DNA of 64,000 bases, from assembly GCA_000320545.1 (NCBI GenBank), contig ADNK01002757.1:50012-114011 (forward strand), read 5' to 3'. The stretch is from Bigelowiella natans CCMP2755. Lineage: Eukaryota; Protista; Cercozoa. Every line of letters starts with the position of its first letter. Positions within the stretch are counted from its first letter, which is position 1. This document shows positions 10,550 to 64,000 of this stretch, one piece after another. Below the pieces are notes generated by a model. The model saw only the letters and a list, made by a program, of their open reading frames with translations, ran no database searches and was not told the DNA's origin. The translations under genes were made by a program, and so were the position numbers.

Positions 10550-11716
10550 CCCGTGGCTTAATACGGAGAGTAAGGTGCTGGTAACAACTCTCGTAAGAAG
10601 GTCTTCCCAATCCAGAAGCTCTTCTTTGTAGTGTGAATGGGGAGGGGGGTATCTTCTAGCACTTTGCAGGAGGCAGTTCAGGATGACATAATAAGGACCG
10701 GTTGTCTACTGCTGCTACTGCACAACAGTACGTGAGTGTGTGTACTTGCACTTTTTCACCTGTTTTAAGGATTTTCCCTTGTCGCTCAATTGCAACATCG
10801 ACGATTCATTCAACAACGAACGAGTTAGCGAGTATACAGAAGGGGTAGTGTCTAATGAGATGTGCTCCTGAAATCAATGCTTGTAGCAGAAATCACCATT
10901 GTACGACCAAAAACAACATCGACAACATCGCGGACTTGTCGTAGATCTAAAATTGGCCAGGGAGGGCACAGATGAGTGTCCCATGATCCTTGCAACACAG
11001 CGCCATTGGAAGCATTCATTTGTTCAGGCCACGTGTGAGCCTTTGTCTTTGTTGACTGACTGTCATTCCCCTCTGTTTGTTGAACCATCATTCCTCTTTG
11101 TTCATTGTTGTCATTGCTGCTGTTTGTTGAACTGTTGCTTCTCTTCACTTGCCATTTCTTTGTTCGCGTTGTGACCACGCTTGTTGCTCTTCGTTTGTCA
11201 TCGTTGCTGCTCGATGTCAACTGACTGTCCTTTGTCCTTGTGCGTTTGTTCATCAGCAATGTCCTCCATCCTCCTTCGCTCGCTCATCAGCAATGTCCTT
11301 CATCGACCATGCGACGCTCGCTTGTCAGCAATGTCCACCACTGGACCACCCTCGTGTTGCACTTTTGCTCACGCACTTGTCTCGTGTGCAACCATGTTCC
11401 GAGTGTGTGTGGCCACGCTGACACGCAGTGATGCTGCACGTTTGCTGCCGCGCTGCGTTGCACCTTTCCAGCTGCTCTCACAATGTCCCAGCCTCCGCCT
11501 TTCGATGGTGGATGCACGGCGACTGTGACACTGCTGTGTGCAACACGCGCCACGTTGTTGTGTCCACCCAAACGTTCGTGTTTCGTCCATGTCCAGCCAT
11601 GCGTCTGTCGCACACACTCGTCGTTCACGTTGTAGTGAAGTTGATGTGACGACGCTCGGTCACACAGTTGGTGTCCGCTCATCGGACACAGCCTTCGCTT
11701 CCACTGTCCTCTGCTG

Positions 11717-12227
11717 GCCTTCCCCGCAGCATCGGTGTGCAAGCAAAATCGGTCACTTGACATTGCAAAATCAATTTTGCACCGTGCAAAATCGGTTTTG
11801 CGTGCAAGTTGGTCACAGTGCTGATTGGCACCCCCCCCAATCCCAACCCACACGCGCAGGAACGTGCCTGTGTTCCAGTGTTTGCTCTTGTCCACCACGC
11901 TAGCACGATGAGCTTCCGCTTCTTTCCACACCTTGTTTTTTGGCGTGGAGAGCAGACGTGGTGGACGTGGTCAGTTTGTGTGTTGTTTGCTTGTGGGGAC
12001 ACGCAACCCCACTTGTGCAGGTTTGATGACTCTGTCAGAGTCGCCCCTTTCAGACCTGGCTTGTGCAGGGCATTTTCACGCACATGTGTCGGTCAAAAAC
12101 TTCATTTTTGCACGAAAAATCGGTGATTCACCGATTCTGGTCAAAACATCGATTTTGGACATGCAAAATCCGTTTTTGCAATGTCAAAAAACCGATTTTG
12201 CTTGCACACCGATTTTGCTGGAAAGCC
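11717..12227. mobile_element. MITE-like element with ~85-bp imperfect terminal inverted repeats and subterminal AAAATCGG motifs
   Basis: atcggtgtgcaagcaaaatcggtcacttgacattgcaaaa (11731-11770) is the near reverse complement of ttttgcaatgtcaaaaaaccgattttgcttgcacaccgat (12174-12213). No transposase ORF; target-site duplication not identified. Confidence 0.55.
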
Positions 12228-12442
12228 CGCTCTGGTGCTGAAACTCTGCAATTTCAGTCACCCGTTCTGCGACCGCTGGGTTGCTCCCAGCAGCATCATC
12301 CGCCGCTTTGCCTTGCGCGCTCTGGCGCTCATGGCAAGTCAATGAAAACAAATCCAAACAAAACAACCCCATTGAAAGTTCAGACTCAGCGCAACAGCAC
12401 GCACAAAGCAAGCAAAACGCAGTGAACTCACCGCGTGCCCTG

Positions 12443-13595
12443 GCCGGCTTGCCTGTGGGTCGTTCCTCGGATTTTCAGGAGGCAACAGACCCGCAGCCGC
12501 TTTTTTGTGGCCAACTCAATTTGTCGGCTGTCACTTTGACAGTGCAATTGTCCCTCTGCGCCGCGCTTGCGCCCGCAACACGTCGCGCAATGTCGGACAA
12601 TCAACGGAAAACATCAACCTTTGATGAACACCATTGAACACCAAACAATCAGCATCAGTGTCAATCCCCATTGACACTGAGGATGCAGGATCATCTGCAA
12701 AATCACCGGCGCCGTCGCCGGTGTGATTCCTGCCCAGTCTCAACAATTGCGAATGCCAGAACTCCGTCTGAAACATCACCCGATTGGGCAACACCCCTCT
12801 CGACGCTGTCTTGCCTCTCCCCACCTCGCACCGACACCTCCCCAGGGTCGTTGCTTGCTCTTCGTCCTCTTCGCATCTCTGCCTCTGCTTCCTTTCGGCC
12901 CACCGCCGTTTGGTTCAATCACGGAGGAGTGATTGCCGTTCACCAACTGCAATCCCCTCCGTTCACTTCCCTCTCTGTCGGTCTCCTAGACTCAATTCGA
13001 TGCGGAGGCAATCCCCTCCGCTCGCTTCCCTCTGTGTCGATCAAACGGAGGCAATCCCCTCCGTTCAATCCCCTCTCCATTGACCATTTGTCAATGACAA
13101 TGATGCACTTGCTGCTCCTGTCGCAGCCCCCTTTGGCAACCAACTTGTTGCCCCCGTGCCATCACGACAACCCCTTGTCGCAATGACGACCATCACGACA
13201 ACCGCTTGTCGCAATGTGATGATGATGATGATGATGACCGCAACGACAACCGCTCGTCGCAAGCCGGTCACGTCCCAAGCGCCCCCCACCAACGGGCCGC
13301 TGAACAGGCGCCAATGTGGGCGCCAACGCAACGACAATGGCGACAATGGGCGCCCATGAGCGCCACGCCATGTCCGCATGTCCGCCGCAACCAGGCGCGA
13401 CATGTGTGCATGCATGTGTCAGGATGATGTGTGACCACAGACAAATTGAAATGCGAAAAGCAGGTTTCGCAAGGTTTTTCGATCGTGCACACTGCGTGCC
13501 CCAGCTAGCCAGCCGGCTTGCCTGCGGGTCGTTCCTCGGATTTTCAGGAGGCAACAGACCCGCAGCTGTCGCATTTTTGTTGCCAACTCAATTTG
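12443..13595. repeat. Pair of ~80-bp direct repeats (12443-12523 and 13512-13595)
   Basis: gccggcttgcctg(t/c)gggtcgttcctcggattttcaggaggcaacagacccgcagc...ccaactcaatttg occurs twice. Confidence 0.9.
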
Positions 13596-13649
13596 GTGCA
13601 AAGTGACAGCAGAAAAACCCTGGGAAGTCTGCTTTTCGCATTTCAATTT
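13443..13649. repeat. 39-bp imperfect inverted repeat enclosing the second direct-repeat copy (small MITE-like unit)
   Basis: aaattgaaatgcgaaaagcaggtttcgcaaggtttttc versus the reverse complement of 13611-13649, aaattgaaatgcgaaaagcagacttcccagggtttttct. Confidence 0.75.
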
Positions 13650-13826
13650 TGGTGAGCTCCACTTTGCGAGCCTCACGCACGACAGTTTTGGCGTTGCAAC
13701 CGACACGTTCCAGGGTTTTGGGTTGGCGGTGATCACAGCGGCGCGCAAAGCGCCAACACTGGAACAAACTGATGCAAGGCAATGCTCTGTGTGCGCTCCA
13801 TCAGGCCACAGCTCCAGAGCTAGCTA

Positions 13827-14272
13827 GCTGGGCTGAGCGTTGAGCTCAAGTCTGGAAGTGTTGAGATGCTCTCCAGCTCTGTGCAGCGCGCTGGCGCGAC
13901 GCTGCCGCTGGAGCAACGAACGCAGAAGTTTGGCAAAGAATCCCATTGGGCTCTGCTGGTCTGATCACAGACGTGTTCGAGCAGTTTGCGAAGCCAGCTC
14001 TGGAGCTTGATGACGATGCGATGCATGTTGGCGCAACGTGTGAGACCGCTCACTTGCGTGCGTGTGCGTTGATGCTTCACGGAGACTTTGAATTTCGCCG
14101 GAGCTGTGCACGTGCAGTCGTCAGCAGTGTGTCTCCAGTGCTGGAGTGCCACAGAGCGCCACAGAGTGTGAAATCGATGCTGGAACAATGTCGCCGCGCC
14201 GGCCTGACAAACCCAGCTAGCCAGAATGCACGCACGTGCGTGCAAGAACATCGGCGACTAAAGCAACACTGA
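13827..14272 (+). pseudogene. Possible mutated coding remnant inside island 2; family not recognised
   Basis: ITDVFEQFAKPALELDDDAMHVGATCETAHLRACALMLHGDFEFRRSCARAVVSSVSPVLECHRAP reads as protein-like. It has no Tyr, and His/Cys sit where Tyr would be plausible. Confidence 0.3.
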
Positions 14273-16958: not shown

Positions 16959-18302
16959 ATGCGCGAAATCGTTCATATCCAAGGAGGTCAGTGCGGTAAC
17001 CAGATCGGTTCCAAGTTTTGGGAAGTTGTTTCCGATGAGCATGGAGTCGACCCTACTGGTACCTATCAGGGAGAGTCCGATCTCCAACTCGAGCGTATCA
17101 ACGTTTACTACAACGAAGCTACCGGTGGCCGCTACGTTCCTCGTGCTGTTCTGATGGATCTTGAGCCTGGAACCATGGACTCTGTCCGTGCTGGACCCTT
17201 TGGTCAGATCTTCCGTCCTGATAACTTCGTTTTCGGACAATCCGGAGCTGGTAACAACTGGGCTAAAGGGCACTATACTGAAGGAGCTGAACTTATCGAC
17301 TCCGTCTTGGACGTAGTTCGTAAGGAAGCTGAGTCTTGCGACTGCCTTCAGGGATTTCAGCTTACCCACTCTCTTGGAGGTGGTACTGGATCTGGTATGG
17401 GTACCCTTCTTGTTTCCAAGATCCGAGAGGAATACCCAGACCGGATGATGTGCACGTTTTCCGTCTTCCCATCTCCTAAGGTTTCTGATACCGTCGTTGA
17501 GCCTTACAACGCTGTCTTGTCTTTCCACCAGCTTGTCGAAAACTCCGATGAGTGCTTTGGACTTGACAACGAAGCCCTGTACGATATCTGCTTCCGTACC
17601 CTTAAGCTGACTACCCCTACATACGGAGACCTTAACCACCTTGTTTCCGCTGCTATGTCCGGAGTTACATGCTGCCTTCGTTTCCCTGGTCAGCTCAACG
17701 CTGACCTCCGAAAGCTTGCTGTAAACTTGATTCCTTTCCCACGTCTGCACTTCTTCATCACCGGTTTCGCTCCTCTCACCTCTCGTGGATCCCAGCAATA
17801 CCGTGCTCTTACTGTTCCAGAGCTTACCCAGCAGATGTTCGATGCTAAGAACATGATGTGCGCTTCTGATCCTCGTCATGGTCGTTACCTCACTGCAGCT
17901 GCTATGTTCCGTGGACGTATGTCCACCAAAGAAGTCGATGAGCAAATGCTCAATGTTCAGAACAAGAACTCTTCGTACTTCGTTGAATGGATCCCTAACA
18001 ACATCAAGTCCGCTGTTTGTGACATCCCTCCTAAGGGTCTCAAGATGTCCACCACCTTCGTAGGAAACTCTACCTGCATCCAAGAGATGTTCCAGCGTGT
18101 TTCTGCACAGTTCACCATGATGTTCCGTCGTAAGGCTTTCCTCCACTGGTACACCGGTGAGGGTATGGACGAGATGGAGTTCACCGAGGCAGAGTCCAAC
18201 ATGAACGACCTCGTGTCTGAGTACCAGCAGTACCAAGAGGCAAGCGCTAACGACGATGATGGAGAAGGAGGAGATGAGGATGGAGAAGACGAGAAGGAAT
18301 AG
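16959..18302 (+). CDS. TUBB: Beta-tubulin, intronless CDS
   Basis: [17 protein letters not shown] start, GGGTGSG signature, acidic C-terminal tail. True ATG is at 16959. Confidence 0.99.
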
Positions 18303-18329
18303 AGGAATAAAGCTCAAAGAATTTTTTTT

Positions 18330-20200
18330 TGTCATCATGCGTTGCCTAGATGCTCTCGTGCGTTTGCAACTGTTGTTCCCGCAACCTTGACCTATGTCAT
18401 GTTCAACAATCGCTACAGTGCATTGTTCCTGTTTCGGAAATGACACAATGAAGCACGATGCGAGCATTTCATCATGCAGTGTGACAATTTTTTGATCGGC
18501 TGAACACACGTAAACTCAAGGAATATGTGCTAACTTCACACTCGAGTGTGTTTGCTCCCATCGGTATGATGGACATGCAACATGATGCACACATTGCATG
18601 TGCACCATGTTGCTGTGTCCATTGCAAGTATATATGGACATTATGTATAAGTAGCGACTATATCCATGTTCATGCACATGAAGGATCTGCGCCACAATGA
18701 TATGATGACTTGGTAAGACGCGCGCAATTTCACACAACCACATCGAGGCCAAATAACCCGGTCTGTCACAAATGGGTTTTGCATGTTTGCAGAGCGCTTC
18801 AAGTGCACTTTTTGCGTGAAATTCGTCCGCAACCGTCACAAAACACTTTCTGAGTCGGCAGAATGTGGAAAAAATGATAAAATTCAAAATCCCAGCTCAA
18901 AAACCTCGATTTTTTTGCTGACGACCCCTCACTGCGGGCGCTGCGGAGAAAATTCTCACGTTTTTGGTCACACGCGTGCAGCCGACGCGCGTGTGCAATG
19001 CGAGCAAGTGAGGACGTGTCCTGTTTGCAATGGAAGTGGCCCCATGCTGGCATCGCATGGACAGCCGGAAGCGCGATGCTCATGATCAAATGTGAAAATT
19101 GATCGAAATGGCGATGCGCTCAAATTTTGAAATTGGGGCATCACTACCACATGCATGCACAGCCACAGGACACACTCGACGTGCTGTCATGATTGCAGAT
19201 GGGTTTTGACGCATTGGAGACACTGCGCAACTGGTTTTCGGTCATCAAAGGCGATTGGTCGTGTGCAAACGCGCGCGCGCAAAATTTGCATTCAAAAGGC
19301 GCACACACGCGGCGCGTGGTGCAAGGAAGCGCGGGGCAAGGACAAAGGGGATCGAGCAGAAGTCGCACCTGCTCGGGGGGGGGGGGGGTGAATGCGAATG
19401 AAAAAAATTCAACTGCGTGTGCCAAAAGTTTTCAAAGACCCCTGCTTGACATCTGAATCGAGTTTGCGCGCGCGAACGCAAAAATGCGTCAATTTTTTTT
19501 TCAATTTTCGTGAAGTTGCGACCGGTTTGGCCTGGATGTGACAAGGGAGTTTTCTCGGCAACCAGATCTAGAGATGTCGGTTGGAGCACGACAGGAGCTG
19601 ATGAGGTTGGGCACAATGCGAACACCATGCACGGTTGCGCATGTTCTTCATTGGCGGAACACTTGCGCAATCATGCAATCCGCCTAGTTGTGACGTGTGC
19701 GCGCATCCGTCTAGCTCATCCGCTGCAGCGAAAGCTCATCATTTGTGCACACACTCATCATTGCCTGTCCACATGCAGCCTCAAATGGCCATGGAGCGCA
19801 CCGAGTCAAAAGCACACATGTTCTCTGAGACACATGTGGTCAAAAAGCAATCCATGTAGTCATTGCATCTAGCTAGCTGTGCTAGCATTCATGCTGTAGT
19901 GCAATGCAAAGATGTGCGTTCGGTCGGGCGCTAGCTATGTGGGCTAGCTTGTTCGGGCGAGTAATTGCGTTGCTGCGATGCGCTGCTGCACACATCATGG
20001 CATGCACATGCACACACTGTATCTTCACAATTTACGGTTTCTAGCCACAGCCATAACTGCACACACATGTCTACGACATCTAGACATGTCATCATGCTCA
20101 TTCTAATGTGTCTCCCGGCCGCAAATAAAGCGAACCACGCACGTACACTCTCTCGCTTGTATGTGTAACAACAACATGCATTGTAGCTTCAATAATGCAC
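18330..20200. other. Island 3: TpA-depleted decayed repeat region with a CTAG-rich margin
   Basis: 4 TA counted in ~18880-19850, 3 of them in CTAG. gctagc runs at 19860-19950. Lies between convergent TUBB and NAA50. Confidence 0.85.
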
Positions 20201-56500: not shown

Positions 56501-58718
56501 GAGAATTTTAAGAGTTTTTTGGACGACGACCTCGCGCTCTTCTCTTGGTTTTGCGAGTTTAAGGTTTGCAGAAAATAAGAGAGCTTCGCGAACACGAAGT
56601 CTACTATCCACTGTGGATATAATTAGATAAGATTGATGACAGGACACGTGAAAAAACCACCCTCAAATTTCACACCCAGTCTGCATAAATAACAAAATTC
56701 AAACTCAACCGATATCTTGCTGTGGAACAAATCCAATCTGTCTTCGAAAGTCAGTCAGCTTGGCGGGTCGTCCATTCACTTTGATATTTCCAGATGTAGC
56801 TGATAATTTCCCACACAGAACGTTGAGGAAGGTGGATTTGCCACTCCCGGATGGTCCCATGACACCTAGTTGTGTCATCACAAAGACTAAGAATACTTCG
56901 TCAAAACTTTTTTTGCTATACCGGTTAATGTTCCAACTTCCATCCTTCCGGATACAGACTTTAGACGCGTAATAAGTCCGTCTGAATCGATTCTCAAAGT
57001 TGCATTTTGAGAACCTGCAGCGCAAACTCCGAAACAGCATCCTTTTGGCGGAGCATGACGTAAACCAACGTTTTCAAAATTGATGGATAACTTTTCCTTT
57101 CCTCCCTCCACTAGGTGATCAGATAAGATATCCATGTTGATGGCGGCCAGCTCAATAGCTTCAAGTGGCCTTGATTCATCTAAGTTTAGACCTCTTTGCT
57201 GCCTCTCACTATGCGCTGCCGGAGAGTTTAAACCAGTGCTATTTTTAAATTCGCTGGAAGCTCCAACACCTTGCCCACTTAATGTGGTTTTTCTTTGAAC
57301 GTTTTTGTCTACTCCATACTCATCAATTTTTCGCCGATTCACCTCAACCTTCTCGTTGCTTACCTTAATTTCACGGGCACGTTCATTCACTTTCAGGAGT
57401 GCTTCTGTCCTCCGTGTATAAAATAAGAACGTGGTCCAGCCTACCAGAAGAGATAGGCATACAAAGAGAAACGGCAGGTATTCGAAGTGCCTTTTTGAGC
57501 CCGCTGGGCATATTGAACCAGAGGGACATTTTATGGGCTGCGAGGATCCCTCAGGACAGTATGATCCTTTTGGGCACTGTATTGAACCACCAGCAAAGTC
57601 TGGACAATACGAACCTGCTGGACAATTTACCGGAAATGTGTTTGCTTTGCAAAGATATCCAGGGGGGCATGGGATGGCTCCACACTGACACTGTGGGAGA
57701 AAAGGGACGTCTGACATAAATCCTGGTGTAACGGCATTGGTGAGATCTAATCCTGCACATCGAATATCGAGTTGAAAGCGAAGAAAGACAAGAAGACTAA
57801 GATCTGAAGTCAGAGGGTCGACTGGGGTTTTAGGAGTTGAACAAAGCCCTGGTGTTATAGTCACATTGAAAGCTAAAGCTTCCAAAAGCTCCTGAAAAGT
57901 ATCCGTAGTTATAAATTAGGCGCATGTAAATTGTGTCCATACAGTGGGACCTGACAACTTCTTCGATTTCCAGAAGGATTTGGACTGCATAAAGGGCATG
58001 CTGAAGTGTCCTATCAATGCGTGTGGACAAATCTTTGACTACAATGCACGTTTATTCAGGCAATTACTCTGCAAAACGTTATTACAGTGTTGTCCGCAAG
58101 AGAAATGCCTGTTGCAACATTTGGATCTGTAGTTTCCTGGAAGCATATTTGCAACCCGTTTGCACCAATGCACTCCGTCTGTGTGGGACTATGAATCATA
58201 GCATTGCTTATGAATACAAGTTCTTAGAATTTGCCCATATGAAAGCTACCTGAATCCTAAATCGTTTGTCTCGTTGAACATTTGCAACCTGTCATGAGAA
58301 TTCAATGTGATTTGAGACATTGTAGGCATTGTAATTAAGATTGTTAATTTTGTACAGCTCGTTTGCACAAATTGTTCCAGAAGCATTTAAAGGGAGGAGA
58401 AAGTTTCTTGCCTTCACAATTGGAGCATGAGGAATTCACATCAGTTGTTTTACAAGATGCATTCATTCATATGACGTAAAGCAACATACGCAATTGTAAA
58501 CACGCATTGAACTTTCTCAAGATACATGTACATTACTTGCTCCCTGCATTGTGCCGAAATTTGAGAATCAATCGCAAGAGAGTTTACTGGGGGGATTTTG
58601 GTCATGGCCTGTGTGAATCAAAGCATGCATCATCACAGCACATGAACAAGAACATCAGCATCATTAAATGTTGAACCAGAAGCAAAGGCAGACATTCCAA
58701 GAAAGATAGCGATGTCAT
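53537..58718 (-). CDS. ABCG (White-type) half-transporter with signal peptide and Cys-rich CPxGxYCP extracellular repeats, multi-exon
   Basis: CPPGYLC, CPAGSYCP, CPKGSYCP, then a TM segment. Walker A GPSGSGKST, GFVPQQD, signature [30 protein letters not shown], and TM-domain exons (RFGFYNAMALG..., GLSYIMAIG). Ends approximate. Confidence 0.9.
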
Positions 58719-58947
58719 TAGCGCGGTCAATCGAAGGCTGAAGTTGATTGGGAAACAAGCACGACGGAACCTAGGCACAGGCACCAGACAAGGCCTGCAC
58801 TAAGTTATACTTCTTTGGCTGGAATATTATTTCATGTTGGAAACAAATAAATGCGGTTTATCACTTGCGACAAGATAATTCCTCACCTATCAACTCGAAC
58901 ACAGCCTCTTTAACAACTCTGATTCGAACCAAAACTTGAAACAAAAA

Positions 58948-61900
58948 ATGGTGGCTCTGTTCCTAAACCTTCTTGTGTTCGGCGGTCTTTCAACAGCACT
59001 GGATGTCAACTCTACTCTTCAAAACTATTGTAGGAAAGTTATGTGCTCTTTTGTGCATAATGTTTAAAATGGATGTTTTTAGATTCTTCTTATACATGTC
59101 CTCAAGGTTTTGACTGCTGGAATCAGGTATGAACTGCTGCAACATCGATAGATTTGAGCTTTTATGTTGATAACATCAATTAGAATTCATGTCCTTCACC
59201 GATTGCGGCATGTCCTGCTGGCTATTTCTGCAACGATCCTGGACTATTTGTACGTTTTAAATGAGAGATTTTCAAATTGGTGAAATGGTAACGAACAACA
59301 CATGTCAGGCCTCCATTGCCCCGGACAACGACTACGAATTTGAGAGAGACACGTAATACATTTTGCGCTGATGGAATAAAAACCTTCAATTATGATTTCC
59401 TTAAATTTAAGATGGTGTCCAGGGGCATTGCACTGTCCATCGACTTCAGAAGCTTTCATGTGCCCAGAGGATAGATACTGTGACCAGGGATCGCAGGGTA
59501 TTGATTGCAAAAATGTTGCTTCGCAGGGATACTACATTTACTTCTAATTACTTTGAACACATACATACACATTCAGTTGGAACAAAGTGCGATCCAGCCG
59601 CCATTTGCCCTGAGGGTTCTCTAGCCCAGGTGCATTAGGATTAGATTATGAACTAAATGTCGTTATTCGATTTCCCATTTTTTACAAGGCTAGATTCTTG
59701 CCAACCATAGTCATGGTCGTCATAGTGACAGGGGTCTTCTTTGTGAGGTCGTCGCTACAAGTGTTATTCGACATTATAAATTGGTGTTCATAAATTAACT
59801 TTACCCGATCATTACATGTGCAGTTACGCAGACCCTGGATTCAAAGGCAATGAAGGAATGCAAAAAATACCTCGTTCACCAGCGATAAATGCAGCTGCAA
59901 AATTCAGTCACATCAACTTTCGGACAAAAAATTTGGCTGTGATACTGCCGAATGGGAAACGCATTCTTCACCCAATCTCGTAAGTGCTTCAAGACATTTA
60001 TTTCATCGAAGCTTGATGATGATCTGAACACTGTTATACACAAAAGCGTAAAATTCAATGCTGGTGAGCTTATTGCCATCATGGGGCCTTCGGGAGCTGG
60101 GAAAACTACGGTGATGCTTGCAATCTACATAGGCATAAATTTAGGGATGAATAAAACCTTGTTTGAAGGTTATGCGAGCTCTGATGACCAACGAACACGA
60201 AGGAGACCTGTGGATCAACAACATTTCGGCTTCTAAAATCCCTTATCAATCACTAATTGGTTTTGTGCCGCAAGGTATAAACTACTTTTTTGTAAGACAT
60301 AAAAAGCTGATGATTGTGTCGAAATAGTTGATGTGTTGAAATATTGTATCAGACGATATCGTGGATTCTACTCTTACCCCGAGGGAAATTCTGATGTATT
60401 CAGCATTTACTCGTTTACCAAAAACATTAAGCTTTGAAGAAATTACAGCTAGGGTGGACGAGGTTCTGAAGCTTTTAGGGTTAAGGCATGTTCAAAATAC
60501 CCGCGTTGGAGATAAGGTCATATGAAAGTTCAACATCGATGGTCACATCAGAATTTTAAATGTTTTATTAAATAATTGCAATTACAACTTCCAACCCTAT
60601 TAGGTGAGTCGTGGTCTTTCTGGTGGAGAAAAGAAACGCGTCTCGATAGGGATAGAACTCATTGCAAATCCATCTGCTCTGTTTCTAGACGAGCCTACCT
60701 CTGGATTAGATGCAAGTAATTTTGCAAGAGAACAAATACATGATTCGAGTTCAATTTGAAATTTTTGGTTAAACTGCGACTTCCACAATTTAGGTAGTGC
60801 AGAAAGACTCGCCACAACTCTTTCGGAGGTTGCTTCGACTGGCCGTTGTGTAGTTGCCGTCATCCACCAGCCTCGATATGATTCGTATCGGAAGTTTAAC
60901 AAACTGTTATTGCTTGGTCGTGGTGGTCATGCAGTATATTTTGGACCATCGGAGGGCGTTGGAAAGTGAGATATGACCCTTCCATTGCAATGAAAATCTC
61001 AATAACTCTGTTTATTAGCAACACCGCTACCCGTAGATGCTGACCCACATGACTGTTCACATCACGACCTCGTCACTTATCATGTTTTAAATGCTTTTCA
61101 TGCCATCCTTCATTTGCACTAGCGTTCTACAACTTACCAATATTGGAACAATTTTTGTCCATGTCATCATTGTAATATTCTCTACCATCGACAACCCAAA
61201 AAAAATATACAATGTCTATCTAGTCATTTGTTACATCCTTTTAGCTAAGTAGTTGTCACATTATGGACATTAGGTACTTTGCTGGTCTCGATCCTGAACT
61301 TACTTGCCCCCCGCAAACAAATGTTGCAAATCATGTCCTTGACATTGTATCCGGTGGGTTTTGCGATCTATTGGCAAGCCTCCATCACATTAAATTGATT
61401 TAAGGGTCACAAATTGAGGGAGGAAATTTGTACAAACCAGGCATTTTTGATAAAGGAAGAAACAGAAATGCCGCTGATAGGCGCTCGACGTTGGTAGTTG
61501 ATGGCGTTTCAGAAATAAAATCCCAGGAAGAAAGGTCCCCCAGTGATGGAAAAGAGGTTATTCTTGGGAAGTCTCCTGGTGAGGCCTTTCCAAATGTCTA
61601 ACAAAAAGGGGTTCATGTTGGCCTATCCACAGGCCCTCATACAGCAAAATCTGATTCAAAAAGCAATGATTGCAATGGCGGCATGGAGGCAGGGGTTCAC
61701 AATGTCAAGGATGGAGATTCTGAGGAAGGAGGCACAGTTTCAAAAAATAAATCCAAAATATTCGCGAAAGATTTTCCAGCGATATGGAACATGAAGTTAG
61801 AAACTAATTCACACAGCATGCAACATTCTCATATTTTACAAATTTGACATTTTGCAGTCCTATTTGATGCACATCTTCATTCAGGCAAGAGAGCAAGGTT

Positions 61901-63320
61901 GAGGATGAGAAGGGAGCTGGGAGACATGTAGAAAGTAATGATGATGTGCATTGAAGAATATCCCTGAACAATTTTTTTAAGCGAAGAAAAGTATGAAACG
62001 CATTTCCACAAGCTACATTCGAACCTGGAACGCAATGATGGTAGGAGTCCTCTAGAACTAACTTGTGTGCCTCACACACATTGCAATGACACACTGCTTC
62101 GTGAAAGATGAGGGCTGCCCTGATGGAGTTGAGGAATCTGTCCTCCATTAAACTCTACATTTTTCTCAACATTTTGCTATCGCTTGTGCTGTCTGTCGCA
62201 TTTTCCCCTTATCTTCAAGGAAGGTAACAACGTCCATGGTGCACAATTTTGTCAACATTCACAGCACAAATCCATTTTCAGATGCACATGGGAACCAGCC
62301 CTTCCACAGTCTTTAGTTCCATACTGTCCAAATTTTGTGGGTAAATGATTCATGCTCATTCATCAATGTTTTGTTCTGGTTTAGATTTCGTTTTACACTT
62401 TCAGATTGCAACCCATCGCGCCGTGGTGCAGGCATCGAGCAGTTGATGTTTTTCATGAACTTAGCAGTCCCTGCCACCAGCGTTGTGGTGGGAGTTGGAT
62501 TGTTCTCCGGCGACATTTTGTTTCTCAAGCGTGAGGGTTCTGCAGGTACATTTTTTGCAAGAATTCCAACCTCCACGAAAGAAAATTGAATCTAGTTTCA
62601 GGAGTTCCAGTCTGGCTTCAAGCAATTTCAAAAATGCTCGTGAACATGGTTCCCATGATCACATACAATGCCGTGTTCACAGCATGCTGGATTCTTCTTG
62701 GACATAGTGGTAAATCTCCCTCATTCAATTGCCATTCCAGAATTTGATGAGGGGATCTAAAATCATCCTCGTGTCACATGTTTTTAGGTTCTACTAATGG
62801 ATGGTTCAGCCTTTTCATTGCACTTGGATTTGCAAGTTCTGGTGTTGGATGCGCAATTTCCTTGGCTGTGTCTCGACAAAATTTGCATCTTGTCTCTTTG
62901 ATCGTGTGTTTCATTTTCGCGGCATTCAGTGGCATTTACCCTCGACTTGACTCTGTTGGAGATGCTGAATGGATTTGGGATCTTTCATTCGCAAGATGGT
63001 CATCGGAGGCAGCGTACTCTCATTCACTTCTTACCTCAATTTCTTTTCATTCTGCATTTTGTGTGACCCATTGTGTCCATTGCCACAGGTTCACTTTGTG
63101 CACTGAGCATTATGCGGATGAAGGTCTTGATGTCTCTAGGCCTGCAGCTGAGCAAATGGGCTACACTTTGGGTAGATTTGAGCATGACATTGGAGCTTTG
63201 TGGGCACTTGGATTTGCCGGACGCATCATTGGCATGATTTCGCTTGTTCGGGTTGCACAACCCGCTGCAAAGAGGTTGGAACATGAATTTGTGATCAAAA
63301 TTAGGAGCATGTTGGGATGA
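58948..63320 (+). CDS. Second ABCG half-transporter with signal peptide and Cys-rich repeats, multi-exon, divergent from the first
   Basis: [17 protein letters not shown] signal peptide, [29 protein letters not shown]|[35 protein letters not shown] and C-terminal GYTLGRF...GRIIG. Confidence 0.92.
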
Positions 63321-63990
63321 TCAAACACGCAATCTGAATGAAAGCACCGATGTGTTCCGCGCAAATTTCAAACACTACGATGTGAGCTTGATCGATGATG
63401 TTGCTCAACGTGCGGTGTGCAAACCACAATGATGATCAGATTGACGCATGTGTTCACAGCTGACAACAGCAGGGGCGGCCAACTGCGTTTTGTGCGTGCA
63501 GTGCGGCGCTGCTGCATCACGCAAAGCTCAGTTTTCATTTCACAGTCCAAATCAAAAACATTGCTTCGACATCCGACACACCTTGCCCAAACAGTGCAAC
63601 ATTGGGCCATGTGACGAGCGGGGCCATGACACGTGCGCACACGTGGCCAGGAGCAACGCACTGTGGCGCTCAGTTTGCACGCCACGGCCGGACAGGCAAA
63701 GCGACGTCCGTTGTGTGCGTGACTCGCGACAGAGAACGTCCCAGGACGTCTCACGGCACGTGTGTCGCACGTGCCAGTGGGGAACGGTTCAACCGCGCAG
63801 CTCGCTGCTCTTTGTGTTCTCAAAATGTTCCTTCGTTCATCCTCGGACTGCCCGCACGCTCGGACAAGTCCAGCAACGTTCTGCACATCGCTGCGTTCGT
63901 GCAGCGCGACAAAGGCATCGGGACGACGCACAGTGAAACCAACGCACAATCGCATTGCAAGTTGAGAAGCTTTCTCGGAGCCGCATGAGC
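63321..63990. other. Island 5: TpA-depleted region downstream of the ABCG gene, probably continuing past the window
   Basis: 1 TA (63376) counted in 63321-63990. Rich in CA, TG and CG. Confidence 0.85.
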
Positions 63991-64000
63991 ATAGGGTTAG

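What the first reader, a model, noticed from the sequence alone, without database searches (positions are those of the whole stretch)
61800..63320. The TpA purge leaks into a live gene: TA gradient along the ABCG gene, with TA kept at splice sites
Seen: the last five introns (62224-62281, 62341-62404, 62546-62601, 62710-62787, 63014-63088; ~330 nt, AT-rich) contain about 11 TA. Five are GTA donors, one is a TAG acceptor and one is CTAG. A single 78-nt upstream intron of the same gene (60275-60352) has 8 TA. The reading frame and GT-AG sites remain intact. Inference: mutation spreads from island 5 into the gene, and purifying selection keeps TA mainly where it is needed. This also argues the process acts in situ rather than reflecting foreign DNA.
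Basis: partly seen in the sequence, partly recalled or inferred. Interest (0 to 1): 0.8.

Follow-up and report, generated by a model that had tools for sequence, protein, structure and literature searches.

The report
TpA hypermutation spills into ABCG gene
The last third of an expressed transporter gene, next to a repeat stripped of all TA steps, has lost nearly every TA that could turn into CA or TG without changing the protein or splicing, so the alga's recently described TA-specific mutator reaches working genes and selection filters the result.

Summary
The last five introns (331 nt, all confirmed by RNA contigs) hold 11 TA: five GTA donors, one TAG acceptor, one CTAG and four others. Intron 60275-60352 alone holds 8.

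The decline is real and specific to TA.
- TA O/E falls along the gene: exons 0.64, 0.44, 0.26; introns 0.73, 0.52, 0.36.
- TA loss (63 to 23 per kb) is balanced by gains of CA (+19) and TG (+25).
- Synonymous T before A falls from 47% to 18%. Synonymous T before other bases stays at 74%.
- Freely mutable A/T-flanked TA falls 25-fold (20.7 to 0.8 per kb). TA locked by constraint (Tyr codons, GTA donors) stays flat (11.7 vs 10.7).
- TA in CTAG and CTAA/TTAG also stays flat, so sequence context protects some survivors as well as selection.

A second gene shows the same thing: beta-tubulin, 580 bp from another island, has this synonymous gradient, and an orthologue from another organism does not. 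A control gene is flat.

The mutator itself is already published (bioRxiv 2026, Bigelowiella natans), and this scan has reported many such islands on other DNA. What is new is the graded, selection-filtered spill into live genes. It is unusually long here (about 1.4-2 kb; about 600 bp at most other islands).

The parts
59822..63320 (+). ABCG-type half transporter (NBD then TMD), modelled part: 17 exons, 715 codons, stop TGA at 63318-63320. Further Cys-rich exons lie upstream from about 59090.
   Evidence: RNA contig joints. Open frame. Exon-by-exon Pfam: ABC_tran E=1.4e-6, ABC2_membrane_7 E=2.9e-5, ABC2_membrane E=0.0017, the last below Pfam's gathering score. Walker A, signature and Walker B motifs are readable.
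59822..61273 (+). Baseline zone of the gene. TA 63 per kb, of which neutral A/T-flanked TA 20.7 per kb. Synonymous T before A 47%.
61274..62107 (+). Transition zone. TA 38 per kb, of which neutral A/T-flanked TA 9.6 per kb. The fitted midpoint of the decline is about 62050.
   Evidence: Introns 61354-61440 and 61579-61632 fit the contig length arithmetic. Introns 61796-61884, 61935-61981 and 62041-62107 are inferred from frame and GT..AG only.
62108..63320 (+). Near-saturated zone: six exons and the five introns of the finding. TA 23 per kb, of which neutral A/T-flanked TA 0.8 per kb and constraint-locked TA 10.7 per kb. Synonymous T before A 18%; xTA:xTG 3:25; no ATA among 20 Ile codons.
   Evidence: The coding frame has no internal stop, against 12 and 16 stops in the other two frames.
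63321..63576 (+). 3' UTR and unique intergenic DNA holding a single TA (63376). RNA contigs end at 63347-63386.
   Evidence: TA list. No other copy in the genome for this part of the query. RNA contig ends.
63577..64000 (.). Repeat part of island 5, cut by the contig end. It comprises an 83-bp unit (63577-63660, 20 or more copies) and a 330-bp unit (63661-63991, 19 or more copies at 72-92% identity). All copies examined are TA-free.
16959..18302 (+). Second case: intronless beta-tubulin gene whose last third shows the same synonymous TA-to-CA gradient.
   Evidence: Pfam Tubulin E=8e-63. T3|A:C3|A by thirds 16:5, 13:9, 8:19, p=0.003; orthologue L032 is flat.
18880..19568 (.). TA-free island 580 bp downstream of the tubulin gene.
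51189..52742 (+). Control gene (tyrosine phosphatase family), more than 2.2 kb from any island. No gradient.
   Evidence: Pfam Y_phosphatase2 E=1e-39. T3|A:C3|A by thirds 12:15, 14:12, 11:17.

Best explanation
The TA-specific DNA mutator of this alga turns TpA into CpA or TpG, that is A to G on either strand. The preprint authors propose adenine deamination. The mutator is drawn to the repeat at the end of the window and has also acted on the unique DNA beside it, with an intensity that falls off over 1.4-2 kb. That stretch holds the last third of an expressed ABCG transporter gene.

Every TA there was exposed. Changes that altered the protein (Tyr to His or Cys) or weakened a donor site were removed by purifying selection. 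Silent changes (TTA to TTG, NNT|A to NNC|A, intron interior) were kept. What remains is TA that is needed, plus TA in the contexts the mutator handles poorly (CTAG, CTAA/TTAG).

Shown here: the TA-specific, strand-symmetric, graded and constraint-structured depletion; expression and splicing of the gene; single-copy status of the gene.

Inferred: that the repeat is the trigger, the direction of spread, the enzyme, and the species (Bigelowiella natans).
For: - The introns and gene are expressed and spliced in three RNA runs.
- TA O/E along the gene: exons 0.64, 0.44, 0.26; introns 0.73, 0.52, 0.36.
- TA falls 63 to 23 per kb while CA rises 72 to 91 and TG 74 to 99 per kb.
- Synonymous T3 before A: 15:17, then 7:16, then 7:31. 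T3 before other bases stays at 73-74% in all three zones (5' vs 3', Fisher p=1.0).
- xTA:xTG goes from 11:14 to 3:25. Pooled Fisher p=3e-4.
- TA per kb in the 5'/mid/3' zones: neutral WTAW 20.7/9.6/0.8; neutral CTAG+CTAA/TTAG 8.3/6.0/6.6; constraint-locked 11.7/8.4/10.7.
- The same context ranking holds among survivors beside other islands. GTA/TAC is not protected there (OR 0.83).
- Graded models beat a single step and a constant (AIC 563, 569, 610).
- No 1,200-bp window far from islands is as TA-poor (0 of 678).
- The gene's 3' part is single-copy.
- The second gene, tubulin, has the gradient while its orthologue L032 does not. The control gene is flat.
- The mutator has been shown experimentally: bioRxiv 10.64898/2026.01.13.699255.
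Against: - No orthologue or unmutated copy of the ABCG gene was found, so the ancestral TA states are inferred, not observed.
- The reach is atypical.
- Partly purged patches also exist far from any full island (C2661 about 51.5-52.25 kb), so adjacency need not mean spread.
- The contig ends inside island 5, so its size and nature are unknown.
- Two inferred mid-gene introns appear largely retained in RNA. That form stops at 61845, so part of the transcripts may not encode the membrane domain.
- ATA (Ile) is absent from the 3' zone (0 of 20, against 8 of 27 upstream) although both of its TA changes are non-synonymous. Selection was therefore not a perfect filter.
- The species was not verified independently.
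Confidence: 0.8

Rival explanations
1. The gene's 3' part is a hypermutation target in its own right, for example through antisense transcription or local chromatin, and merely happens to lie beside island 5. Nothing spreads from the repeat.
For: Partly purged patches occur tens of kb from any full island. Most island flanks recover within 600 bp. Between tubulin and its island lies a TA-retaining patch (18511-18760).
Against: The depletion is monotonic towards the repeat and continues through the unique 3' UTR and intergenic DNA to zero at the repeat edge. Short-range depletion beside islands is general across 28 flanks (p=1e-11 at 0-200 bp).
Confidence: 0.12
2. Ordinary composition or selection explains it: the hydrophobic membrane domain, codon usage, GC-biased gene conversion, or selection against UA in the mRNA make the 3' part TA-poor without any local mutator.
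For: The 3' zone encodes transmembrane helices and has a different base composition (A 0.22, T 0.34, against 0.30 and 0.30). TA is mildly avoided everywhere in this genome (O/E 0.83).
Against: Synonymous T3 before non-A is unchanged at 74%, so there is no general GC3 shift. Introns and untranscribed downstream DNA are depleted too, which selection at the mRNA level cannot do. The survivors follow the mutator's context ranking. No far window reaches this value.
Confidence: 0.05
3. Chance fluctuation picked out after the fact by a reader scanning for patterns.
For: Counts per intron are small, and the region was chosen after looking at it.
Confidence: 0.02

Closest known systems
TpA hypermutation of integrated viral and other foreign DNA in Bigelowiella natans (Mettrop et al., bioRxiv 10.64898/2026.01.13.699255)
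   Same: Same signature: only TpA is hit, it becomes CpA or TpG, and regions are locally clustered, TA-poor and CA/TG-rich.
   Different: The paper treats whole regions and whole CDS. A search of its main text found no occurrence of flank, spread, intron or boundary. Its supplementary Pfam table appears to give PF00005 and PF01061 a count of 0 in the TpA-depleted CDS set, though the column meaning is my reading. Here the target is the margin of an expressed cellular gene, the effect is graded, and it is split by constraint and by tetranucleotide context.
[quoted passage not shown] 2011, PMC3105345; Testa et al. 2016, PMC4943192)
   Same: A repeat-directed mutator overruns the repeat into neighbouring unique genes, and selection keeps the gene functional while it accumulates the mutator's signature.
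   Different: The chemistry is opposite: RIP turns C into T, mainly CpA into TpA, and makes DNA AT-rich. Here TpA becomes CpA or TpG and the DNA becomes GC-richer. RIP acts premeiotically on duplicated DNA. Here hypermutation was recorded in mitotic mutation-accumulation lines, and the trigger is unknown. The organism is a rhizarian alga, not a fungus.
ADAR-type A-to-I editing with a 5' U preference
   Same: A-to-G outcome with T/U before the edited A. The preprint makes this comparison.
   Different: ADAR edits RNA. Here the change is in genomic DNA, including introns and untranscribed DNA.

Membership tests
TpA-to-CpA/TpG hypermutated region (B. natans type) | Loss of TpA with a matching gain of CpA+TpG | tested here: met
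   TA falls 63 to 23 per kb; CA+TG rises 146 to 190 per kb. TA O/E 0.31 and CA+TG O/E 1.53.
TpA-to-CpA/TpG hypermutated region (B. natans type) | Specific to TpA: other T/C and A/G choices are unaffected | tested here: met
   T3 before non-A is 74%, 73% and 74% along the gene. x[CG]A is not reduced.
TpA-to-CpA/TpG hypermutated region (B. natans type) | Both strands hit (both CA and TG products) | tested here: met
   CA +19 and TG +25 per kb. Both T3|A to C3|A and xTA to xTG are shifted.
TpA-to-CpA/TpG hypermutated region (B. natans type) | Derived state shown against an unmutated ancestor or relative | tested here: inconclusive
   No ABCG orthologue was found. For the neighbouring tubulin gene, the orthologue L032 has TA where the window has CA at 6 sites in the last third, against 2 the other way. 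In the first third the counts are 1 against 4.
TpA-to-CpA/TpG hypermutated region (B. natans type) | Elevated de novo mutation rate at the locus | not testable with these tools
   This needs mutation-accumulation or population data. RNA contigs of three runs show no difference from the window in the gene.
Mutator leakage from a repeat into a flanking live gene (RIP-leakage-like) | The flanking sequence is single-copy | tested here: met
   61800-63320 matches only itself in the 91.4-Mb genome. 63330-63576 also has no other copy.
Mutator leakage from a repeat into a flanking live gene (RIP-leakage-like) | The adjacent sequence is a repeat bearing the mutator's signature | tested here: met
   42 matches in the genome. 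The copies examined are TA-free.
Mutator leakage from a repeat into a flanking live gene (RIP-leakage-like) | Intensity declines with distance from the repeat | tested here: met
   Sigmoid fit with midpoint about 62050 and width about 510 bp. Graded models beat a step by 6 AIC units. The meta-profile of 28 other flanks also decays, within about 600 bp.
Mutator leakage from a repeat into a flanking live gene (RIP-leakage-like) | The gene stays functional under selection | tested here: met
   Spliced RNA. Open frame, against 12 and 16 stops in the other frames. Tyr and donor TA are kept while neutral TA is lost 25-fold. Caveat: two mid-gene introns appear largely retained.
ABCG half transporter | N-terminal ABC ATPase domain followed by an ABC-2 type membrane domain | tested here: met
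   Exon-by-exon Pfam hits ABC_tran, ABC2_membrane_7 and ABC2_membrane, in that order; the last is below Pfam's gathering score. The joined protein was not searched.

The most novel reading that the evidence does not exclude
The mutator's reach beyond its trigger is long (1.4 kb or more) and grows with the age of the insertion. Repeat insertions would then silently recode neighbouring host genes and occasionally change their proteins (for example the loss of all ATA-Ile codons here). That would be an algal, GC-enriching counterpart of RIP leakage, and it would create fast-evolving gene margins. It would also make the surviving TA a natural saturation-mutagenesis map of functional constraint, such as the +3 A of weak splice donors.
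Probability: 0.45. Interest if true: 0.65.

Novelty: new variant of a known kind. Interest (0 to 1): 0.55.

Why it matters
The published work presents the TpA mutator as a defence aimed at foreign DNA. This locus shows collateral action on an expressed cellular gene, and a second gene suggests the same.

It also gives three handles on mechanism that the preprint lacks:
- A length scale: about 0.6 kb for the usual tail, and up to about 2 kb here.
- Strand symmetry within a transcribed gene.
- A tetranucleotide hierarchy: A/T-flanked TA is most sensitive, while CTAG and CTAA/TTAG are resistant.

The locus also shows how mutation pressure and purifying selection can be separated site by site. Tyr codons and GTA donors persist at the upstream density while neutral TA falls 25-fold. 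If general, genes beside repeats in this alga evolve under a distinct, predictable mutational regime, as effector genes do beside RIP-affected repeats in fungi.

Tried and rejected
- Orthologue of the ABCG gene: two scans of metagenome and metatranscriptome contigs, with the two largest 3' exons by reference, found nothing.
The meta-analysis rests on 10 islands in 264 kb plus 7 repeat loci.
- Protein content of the island-5 repeat family: long ORFs in copies L005 and L006 have no Pfam match. They are artefacts of TA-free DNA, which lacks TAA and TAG stops.
- My first model of introns 61796-61857 and 61898-61981 broke the frame and was replaced. An attempt to place two introns between 59577 and 59821 failed, so that part is left out of the model.
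- 'C before or G after TA' as the resistant class: kept only in refined form. The ATAG/CTAT class is not resistant beside other islands. CTAG is enriched there in absolute terms, so survival alone does not explain it.
- GTA as a context the mutator avoids: rejected (OR 0.83 near islands; 2 of 19 survivors inside islands).
- GC-biased conversion or a general GC3 shift: rejected.
- The costly all-protein search was not used, because identifying the protein was not in question.
- The spliced protein was never joined for any search tool. Exons were searched one by one by reference. Joining was done only in memory in scripts, to count codons and check the frame.
Full report
**What is in the window.** The window is 64 kb of a eukaryotic genome with about 40% GC and short GT..AG introns. 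It lies at the end of a 114-kb contig of a 91.4-Mb assembly. It holds several tracts of 0.6-3.3 kb with no or almost no TA, high CA+TG and undepleted CpG: 10950-14217, 18880-19568, 47725-48925 and 63378 to the window end.

Earlier notes of this scan pointed to a 2026 preprint, which I read. In mutation-accumulation lines of Bigelowiella natans, two integrated viral regions mutate about 1000 times faster than the rest of the genome. The mutations are almost only TpA to TpG or CpA. TA-poor, CA/TG-rich clusters occur genome-wide. The species itself I did not verify independently. The scan has therefore found this phenomenon before, on other DNA. The question here is narrower: does it reach into a working gene?

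**The gene.** Contigs from three RNA-type runs, from three studies, lie on 59.2-63.4 kb. They also show eight further upstream introns.

Exons searched one by one by reference hit ABC_tran, ABC2_membrane_7 and ABC2_membrane, in that order; the ABC2_membrane hit is below Pfam's gathering score. The Walker A, signature and Walker B motifs can be read. The gene is an ABCG-type half transporter with Cys-rich exons upstream. The joined protein was not sent to any search tool. I joined exons only in memory in scripts, to count codons.

One caveat: an RNA contig runs unspliced from 61632 to 62040 at a depth at least equal to that of the exons. Introns 61796-61884 and 61935-61981 therefore look largely retained, and that form stops at 61845.

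**The observation.** The five last introns (331 nt) hold 11 TA, and intron 60275-60352 holds 8. The 11 are five GTA donors, one TAG acceptor (62785), one CTAG (62593), and four others (62382, 62394, 62758, 63032).

**Is the decline real?**

| Measure | 5' zone (59822-61273) | mid zone (61274-62107) | 3' zone (62108-63320) |
|---|---|---|---|
| Intron TA O/E | 0.73 | 0.52 | 0.36 |
| Exon TA O/E | 0.64 | 0.44 | 0.26 |
| TA per kb | 63 | 38 | 23 |
| CA per kb | 72 | 85 | 91 |
| TG per kb | 74 | 78 | 99 |

- The intron rows group nine RNA-confirmed upstream introns, then five inferred middle introns, then the last five.
- In the unique DNA after the stop codon (63321-63576), TA is 4 per kb.
- The loss of about 40 TA per kb is matched by a gain of about 44 CA+TG per kb, shared by both products.
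- The 3' zone has TA O/E 0.31, below all 678 windows of the same size lying more than 2.5 kb from any island in 274 kb of this genome (minimum 0.39).
- In susceptible contexts, TA/(TA+CA+TG) is about 0.27 up to 61.8 kb, then 0.11-0.15, then 0.06, then 0.
- Graded models (sigmoid with midpoint about 62050 and width about 510 bp, AIC 563) fit better than one step (569) or a constant (610).

**Is it the mutator, or composition?**

| Synonymous choice | 5' zone | mid zone | 3' zone |
|---|---|---|---|
| T vs C at third position, before A | 15:17 (47% T) | 7:16 (30% T) | 7:31 (18% T) |
| T vs C at third position, before other bases | 75:27 | 45:17 | 93:33 |
| Leu/Val xTA vs xTG | 11:14 | 3:1 | 3:25 |
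| A vs G at third position after C or G | 32:22 | 21:11 | 46:13 |

- The share of T before non-A bases is 73-74% throughout.
- A-ending codons after C or G do not decline.
- Pooled, the shift has Fisher p=3e-4; the non-A control has p=1.0.

This excludes a general GC3 shift, biased gene conversion and ordinary codon usage. Introns and untranscribed DNA are depleted too, which excludes selection on the mRNA.

**Why do the remaining TA remain?** I sorted every TA by two criteria: whether at least one of its two possible changes is silent, and its flanking bases. Densities per kb:

| TA class | 5' | mid | 3' |
|---|---|---|---|
| Neutral, flanked by A/T on both sides | 20.7 | 9.6 | 0.8 |
| Neutral, other contexts | 22.0 | 14.4 | 4.9 |
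| Neutral, in CTAG or CTAA/TTAG | 8.3 | 6.0 | 6.6 |
| Constraint-locked (Tyr, ATA, GTA donor, TAG acceptor) | 11.7 | 8.4 | 10.7 |

- Of the 28 survivors in the 3' zone, 13 are locked by function: seven Tyr codons, five donors and one acceptor.
- Eight sit in resistant contexts, and seven are others.
- The same context ranking appears among TA surviving beside other islands. Share near an island relative to far away: ATAA 0.5, ATAT 0.6, CTAA/TTAG 1.4, CTAG 6.4.
- GTA/TAC is not protected there (OR 0.83).

The five GTA donors are therefore best explained by selection. All five lack G at +5, so they are weak donors.

Selection was not a perfect filter. ATA (Ile) is absent from the 3' zone (0 of 20 Ile, against 8 of 27 upstream; p=0.014), although both of its changes alter the amino acid. 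This suggests that some Ile-to-Met or Ile-to-Thr replacements were accepted (inference).

The coding frame of the 3' zone has no internal stop, against 12 and 16 in the other frames. The frame is thus informative even in TA-poor DNA.

**In situ or imported?** The gene's 3' part (61800-63320) matches only itself in the genome, and 63330-63576 has no other copy. These sequences must have mutated where they are.

The repeat part of island 5 is different. It consists of an 83-bp unit and a 330-bp unit, with 42 matches in the genome. Eight aligned copies are all TA-free and share the same CA or TG in 38 columns. Only one column is cleanly discordant between CA and TG, at a former CTAG. The family therefore seems to have been TA-free before it spread, unless the mutator's strand choice is fixed by the element. 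But the island was not necessarily purged here.

**How general is the spill?** In 28 other island flanks, TA that is neither preceded by C nor followed by G runs at 13, 24 and 29 per kb in the first three 200-bp bins. It is back to the background of 45 per kb from 600 bp onward. C/G-flanked TA stays flat (O/E version). Short-range spill is thus general.

The ABCG flank is the extreme case. At 600-1800 bp its TA O/E is 0.37, against 0.63 for the next of 19 flanks. For comparison, island 47725-48925 is made wholly of younger repeats (93-97% identical copies) and has only a 600-bp tail. This is consistent with a reach that grows with age, but I could not test that.

Partly purged patches also exist far from any full island. 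This keeps alive the rival reading that the gene's 3' part is a target in its own right.

An intronless beta-tubulin gene (16959-18302; Pfam Tubulin E=8e-63) ends 580 bp before island 18880-19568.
- Its synonymous T:C before A runs 16:5, 13:9, 8:19 by thirds (p=0.003). T:C before other bases stays near 50%.
- Two metatranscriptome contigs encode the identical protein.
- L033 is the same locus from a close strain: 22 silent differences and a homologous 3' UTR. It shares the gradient.
- L032 differs at 126 silent sites and is not in this genome (best match 91%), so it comes from another organism. It is flat: 12:9, 13:9, 11:13 (p=0.55).
- Sites where L032 has TA and the window has CA or TG, against the reverse, run 1:4, 3:2 and 6:2 along the gene.
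- The case is less clean than ABCG, because a TA-retaining patch (18511-18760) lies between the gene and the island.
- A phosphatase gene more than 2.2 kb from any island is flat: 12:15, 14:12, 11:17.

**Comparison with what is known.** The mutator is published. The preprint's main text does not discuss flanks, introns, borders or spread. Its supplementary table appears to give the ABC transporter families a count of 0 in its TpA-depleted CDS set (the column meaning is my reading).

The closest concept is leakage of fungal RIP from repeats into adjacent single-copy genes, with selection keeping those genes alive (PMC3105345, PMC4943192). The logic is the same, but the chemistry is the mirror image, and here hypermutation was recorded in mitotic mutation-accumulation lines. 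I therefore rate this a new variant of a known kind. The spill into live genes, its length scale, its strand symmetry and the joint filter of constraint and context are new details. The mutational system is not.

**Limits.**
- No ABCG orthologue was found.
- Only about 300 kb of the genome could be read.
- The contig ends inside island 5.
- Three mid-gene introns rest on inference.
- The species assignment rests on the signature, the genome size and unverified notes.

Noticed in passing
window 16959-18302 (beta-tubulin) and 18303-18500 (its 3' UTR): A housekeeping gene 580 bp from island 18880-19568 shows a synonymous TA-to-CA gradient in its last third. Its 3' UTR keeps only 4 TA. One of them lies in AATAAA just after the stop codon, which may be the poly(A) signal. 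A close-strain transcript (L033) has GTAC where the window has GTGC.
   Followed up: yes
window 63577-63991; loci L002-L008: The repeat family of island 5 is TA-free in all eight aligned copies, and they share the same CA/TG states (38 shared columns, 1 clean CA/TG discordance at a former CTAG). The family seems to have multiplied after it was purged. Differences between copies are dominated by C-to-T and G-to-A.
   Followed up: partly
window and C2661, within 400 bp of islands: CTAG is enriched beside islands in absolute terms (about 11 per kb, against 3.2 per kb far away), which is more than survival alone can give.
   Followed up: partly
window 61632-62040: An RNA contig (run X1, depth 398) runs unspliced across inferred introns 61796-61884 and 61935-61981. 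Contigs of X2 and X6 break at 61796. Intron retention here would end the protein at 61845, before the membrane domain. These two introns lie in the transition zone of TA loss.
   Followed up: partly
window 63300: One RNA contig ends in a run of 18 A at 63300, which is 18 bases before the stop codon and next to a genomic AAAA. This is either internal priming or a poly(A) site inside the coding sequence.
   Followed up: no
C2661 51501-52250, 145501-146750 and 148501-149000 (loci L017, L026): Partly purged patches (TA O/E 0.15-0.45, CA+TG O/E 1.4-2.0) that are not next to any fully TA-free island. They may be young or weak targets.
   Followed up: no
window 59090-59630: The upstream exons of the ABCG gene encode Cys-rich repeats of the CPxGxYC type, joined by RNA contigs to the ATPase exons. 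This is an unusual N-terminal extension for an ABCG transporter.
   Followed up: no
window 58100-58900: A gene on the minus strand with a CT..AC (that is, GT..AG) intron at about 58608-58675 is seen in all three RNA contig runs, back to back with the ABCG gene.
   Followed up: no
window 63917 and 63951: Raw RNA reads of run X21 differ from the window here (A>G and C>T) inside the repeat. They are most likely reads from other copies of the family.
   Followed up: no
loci L005, L006; window islands: TA-free DNA has no TAA or TAG stops, so it shows many overlapping ORFs of 100-260 codons in several frames with no Pfam match. Long ORFs in such tracts are not evidence of genes.
   Followed up: yes
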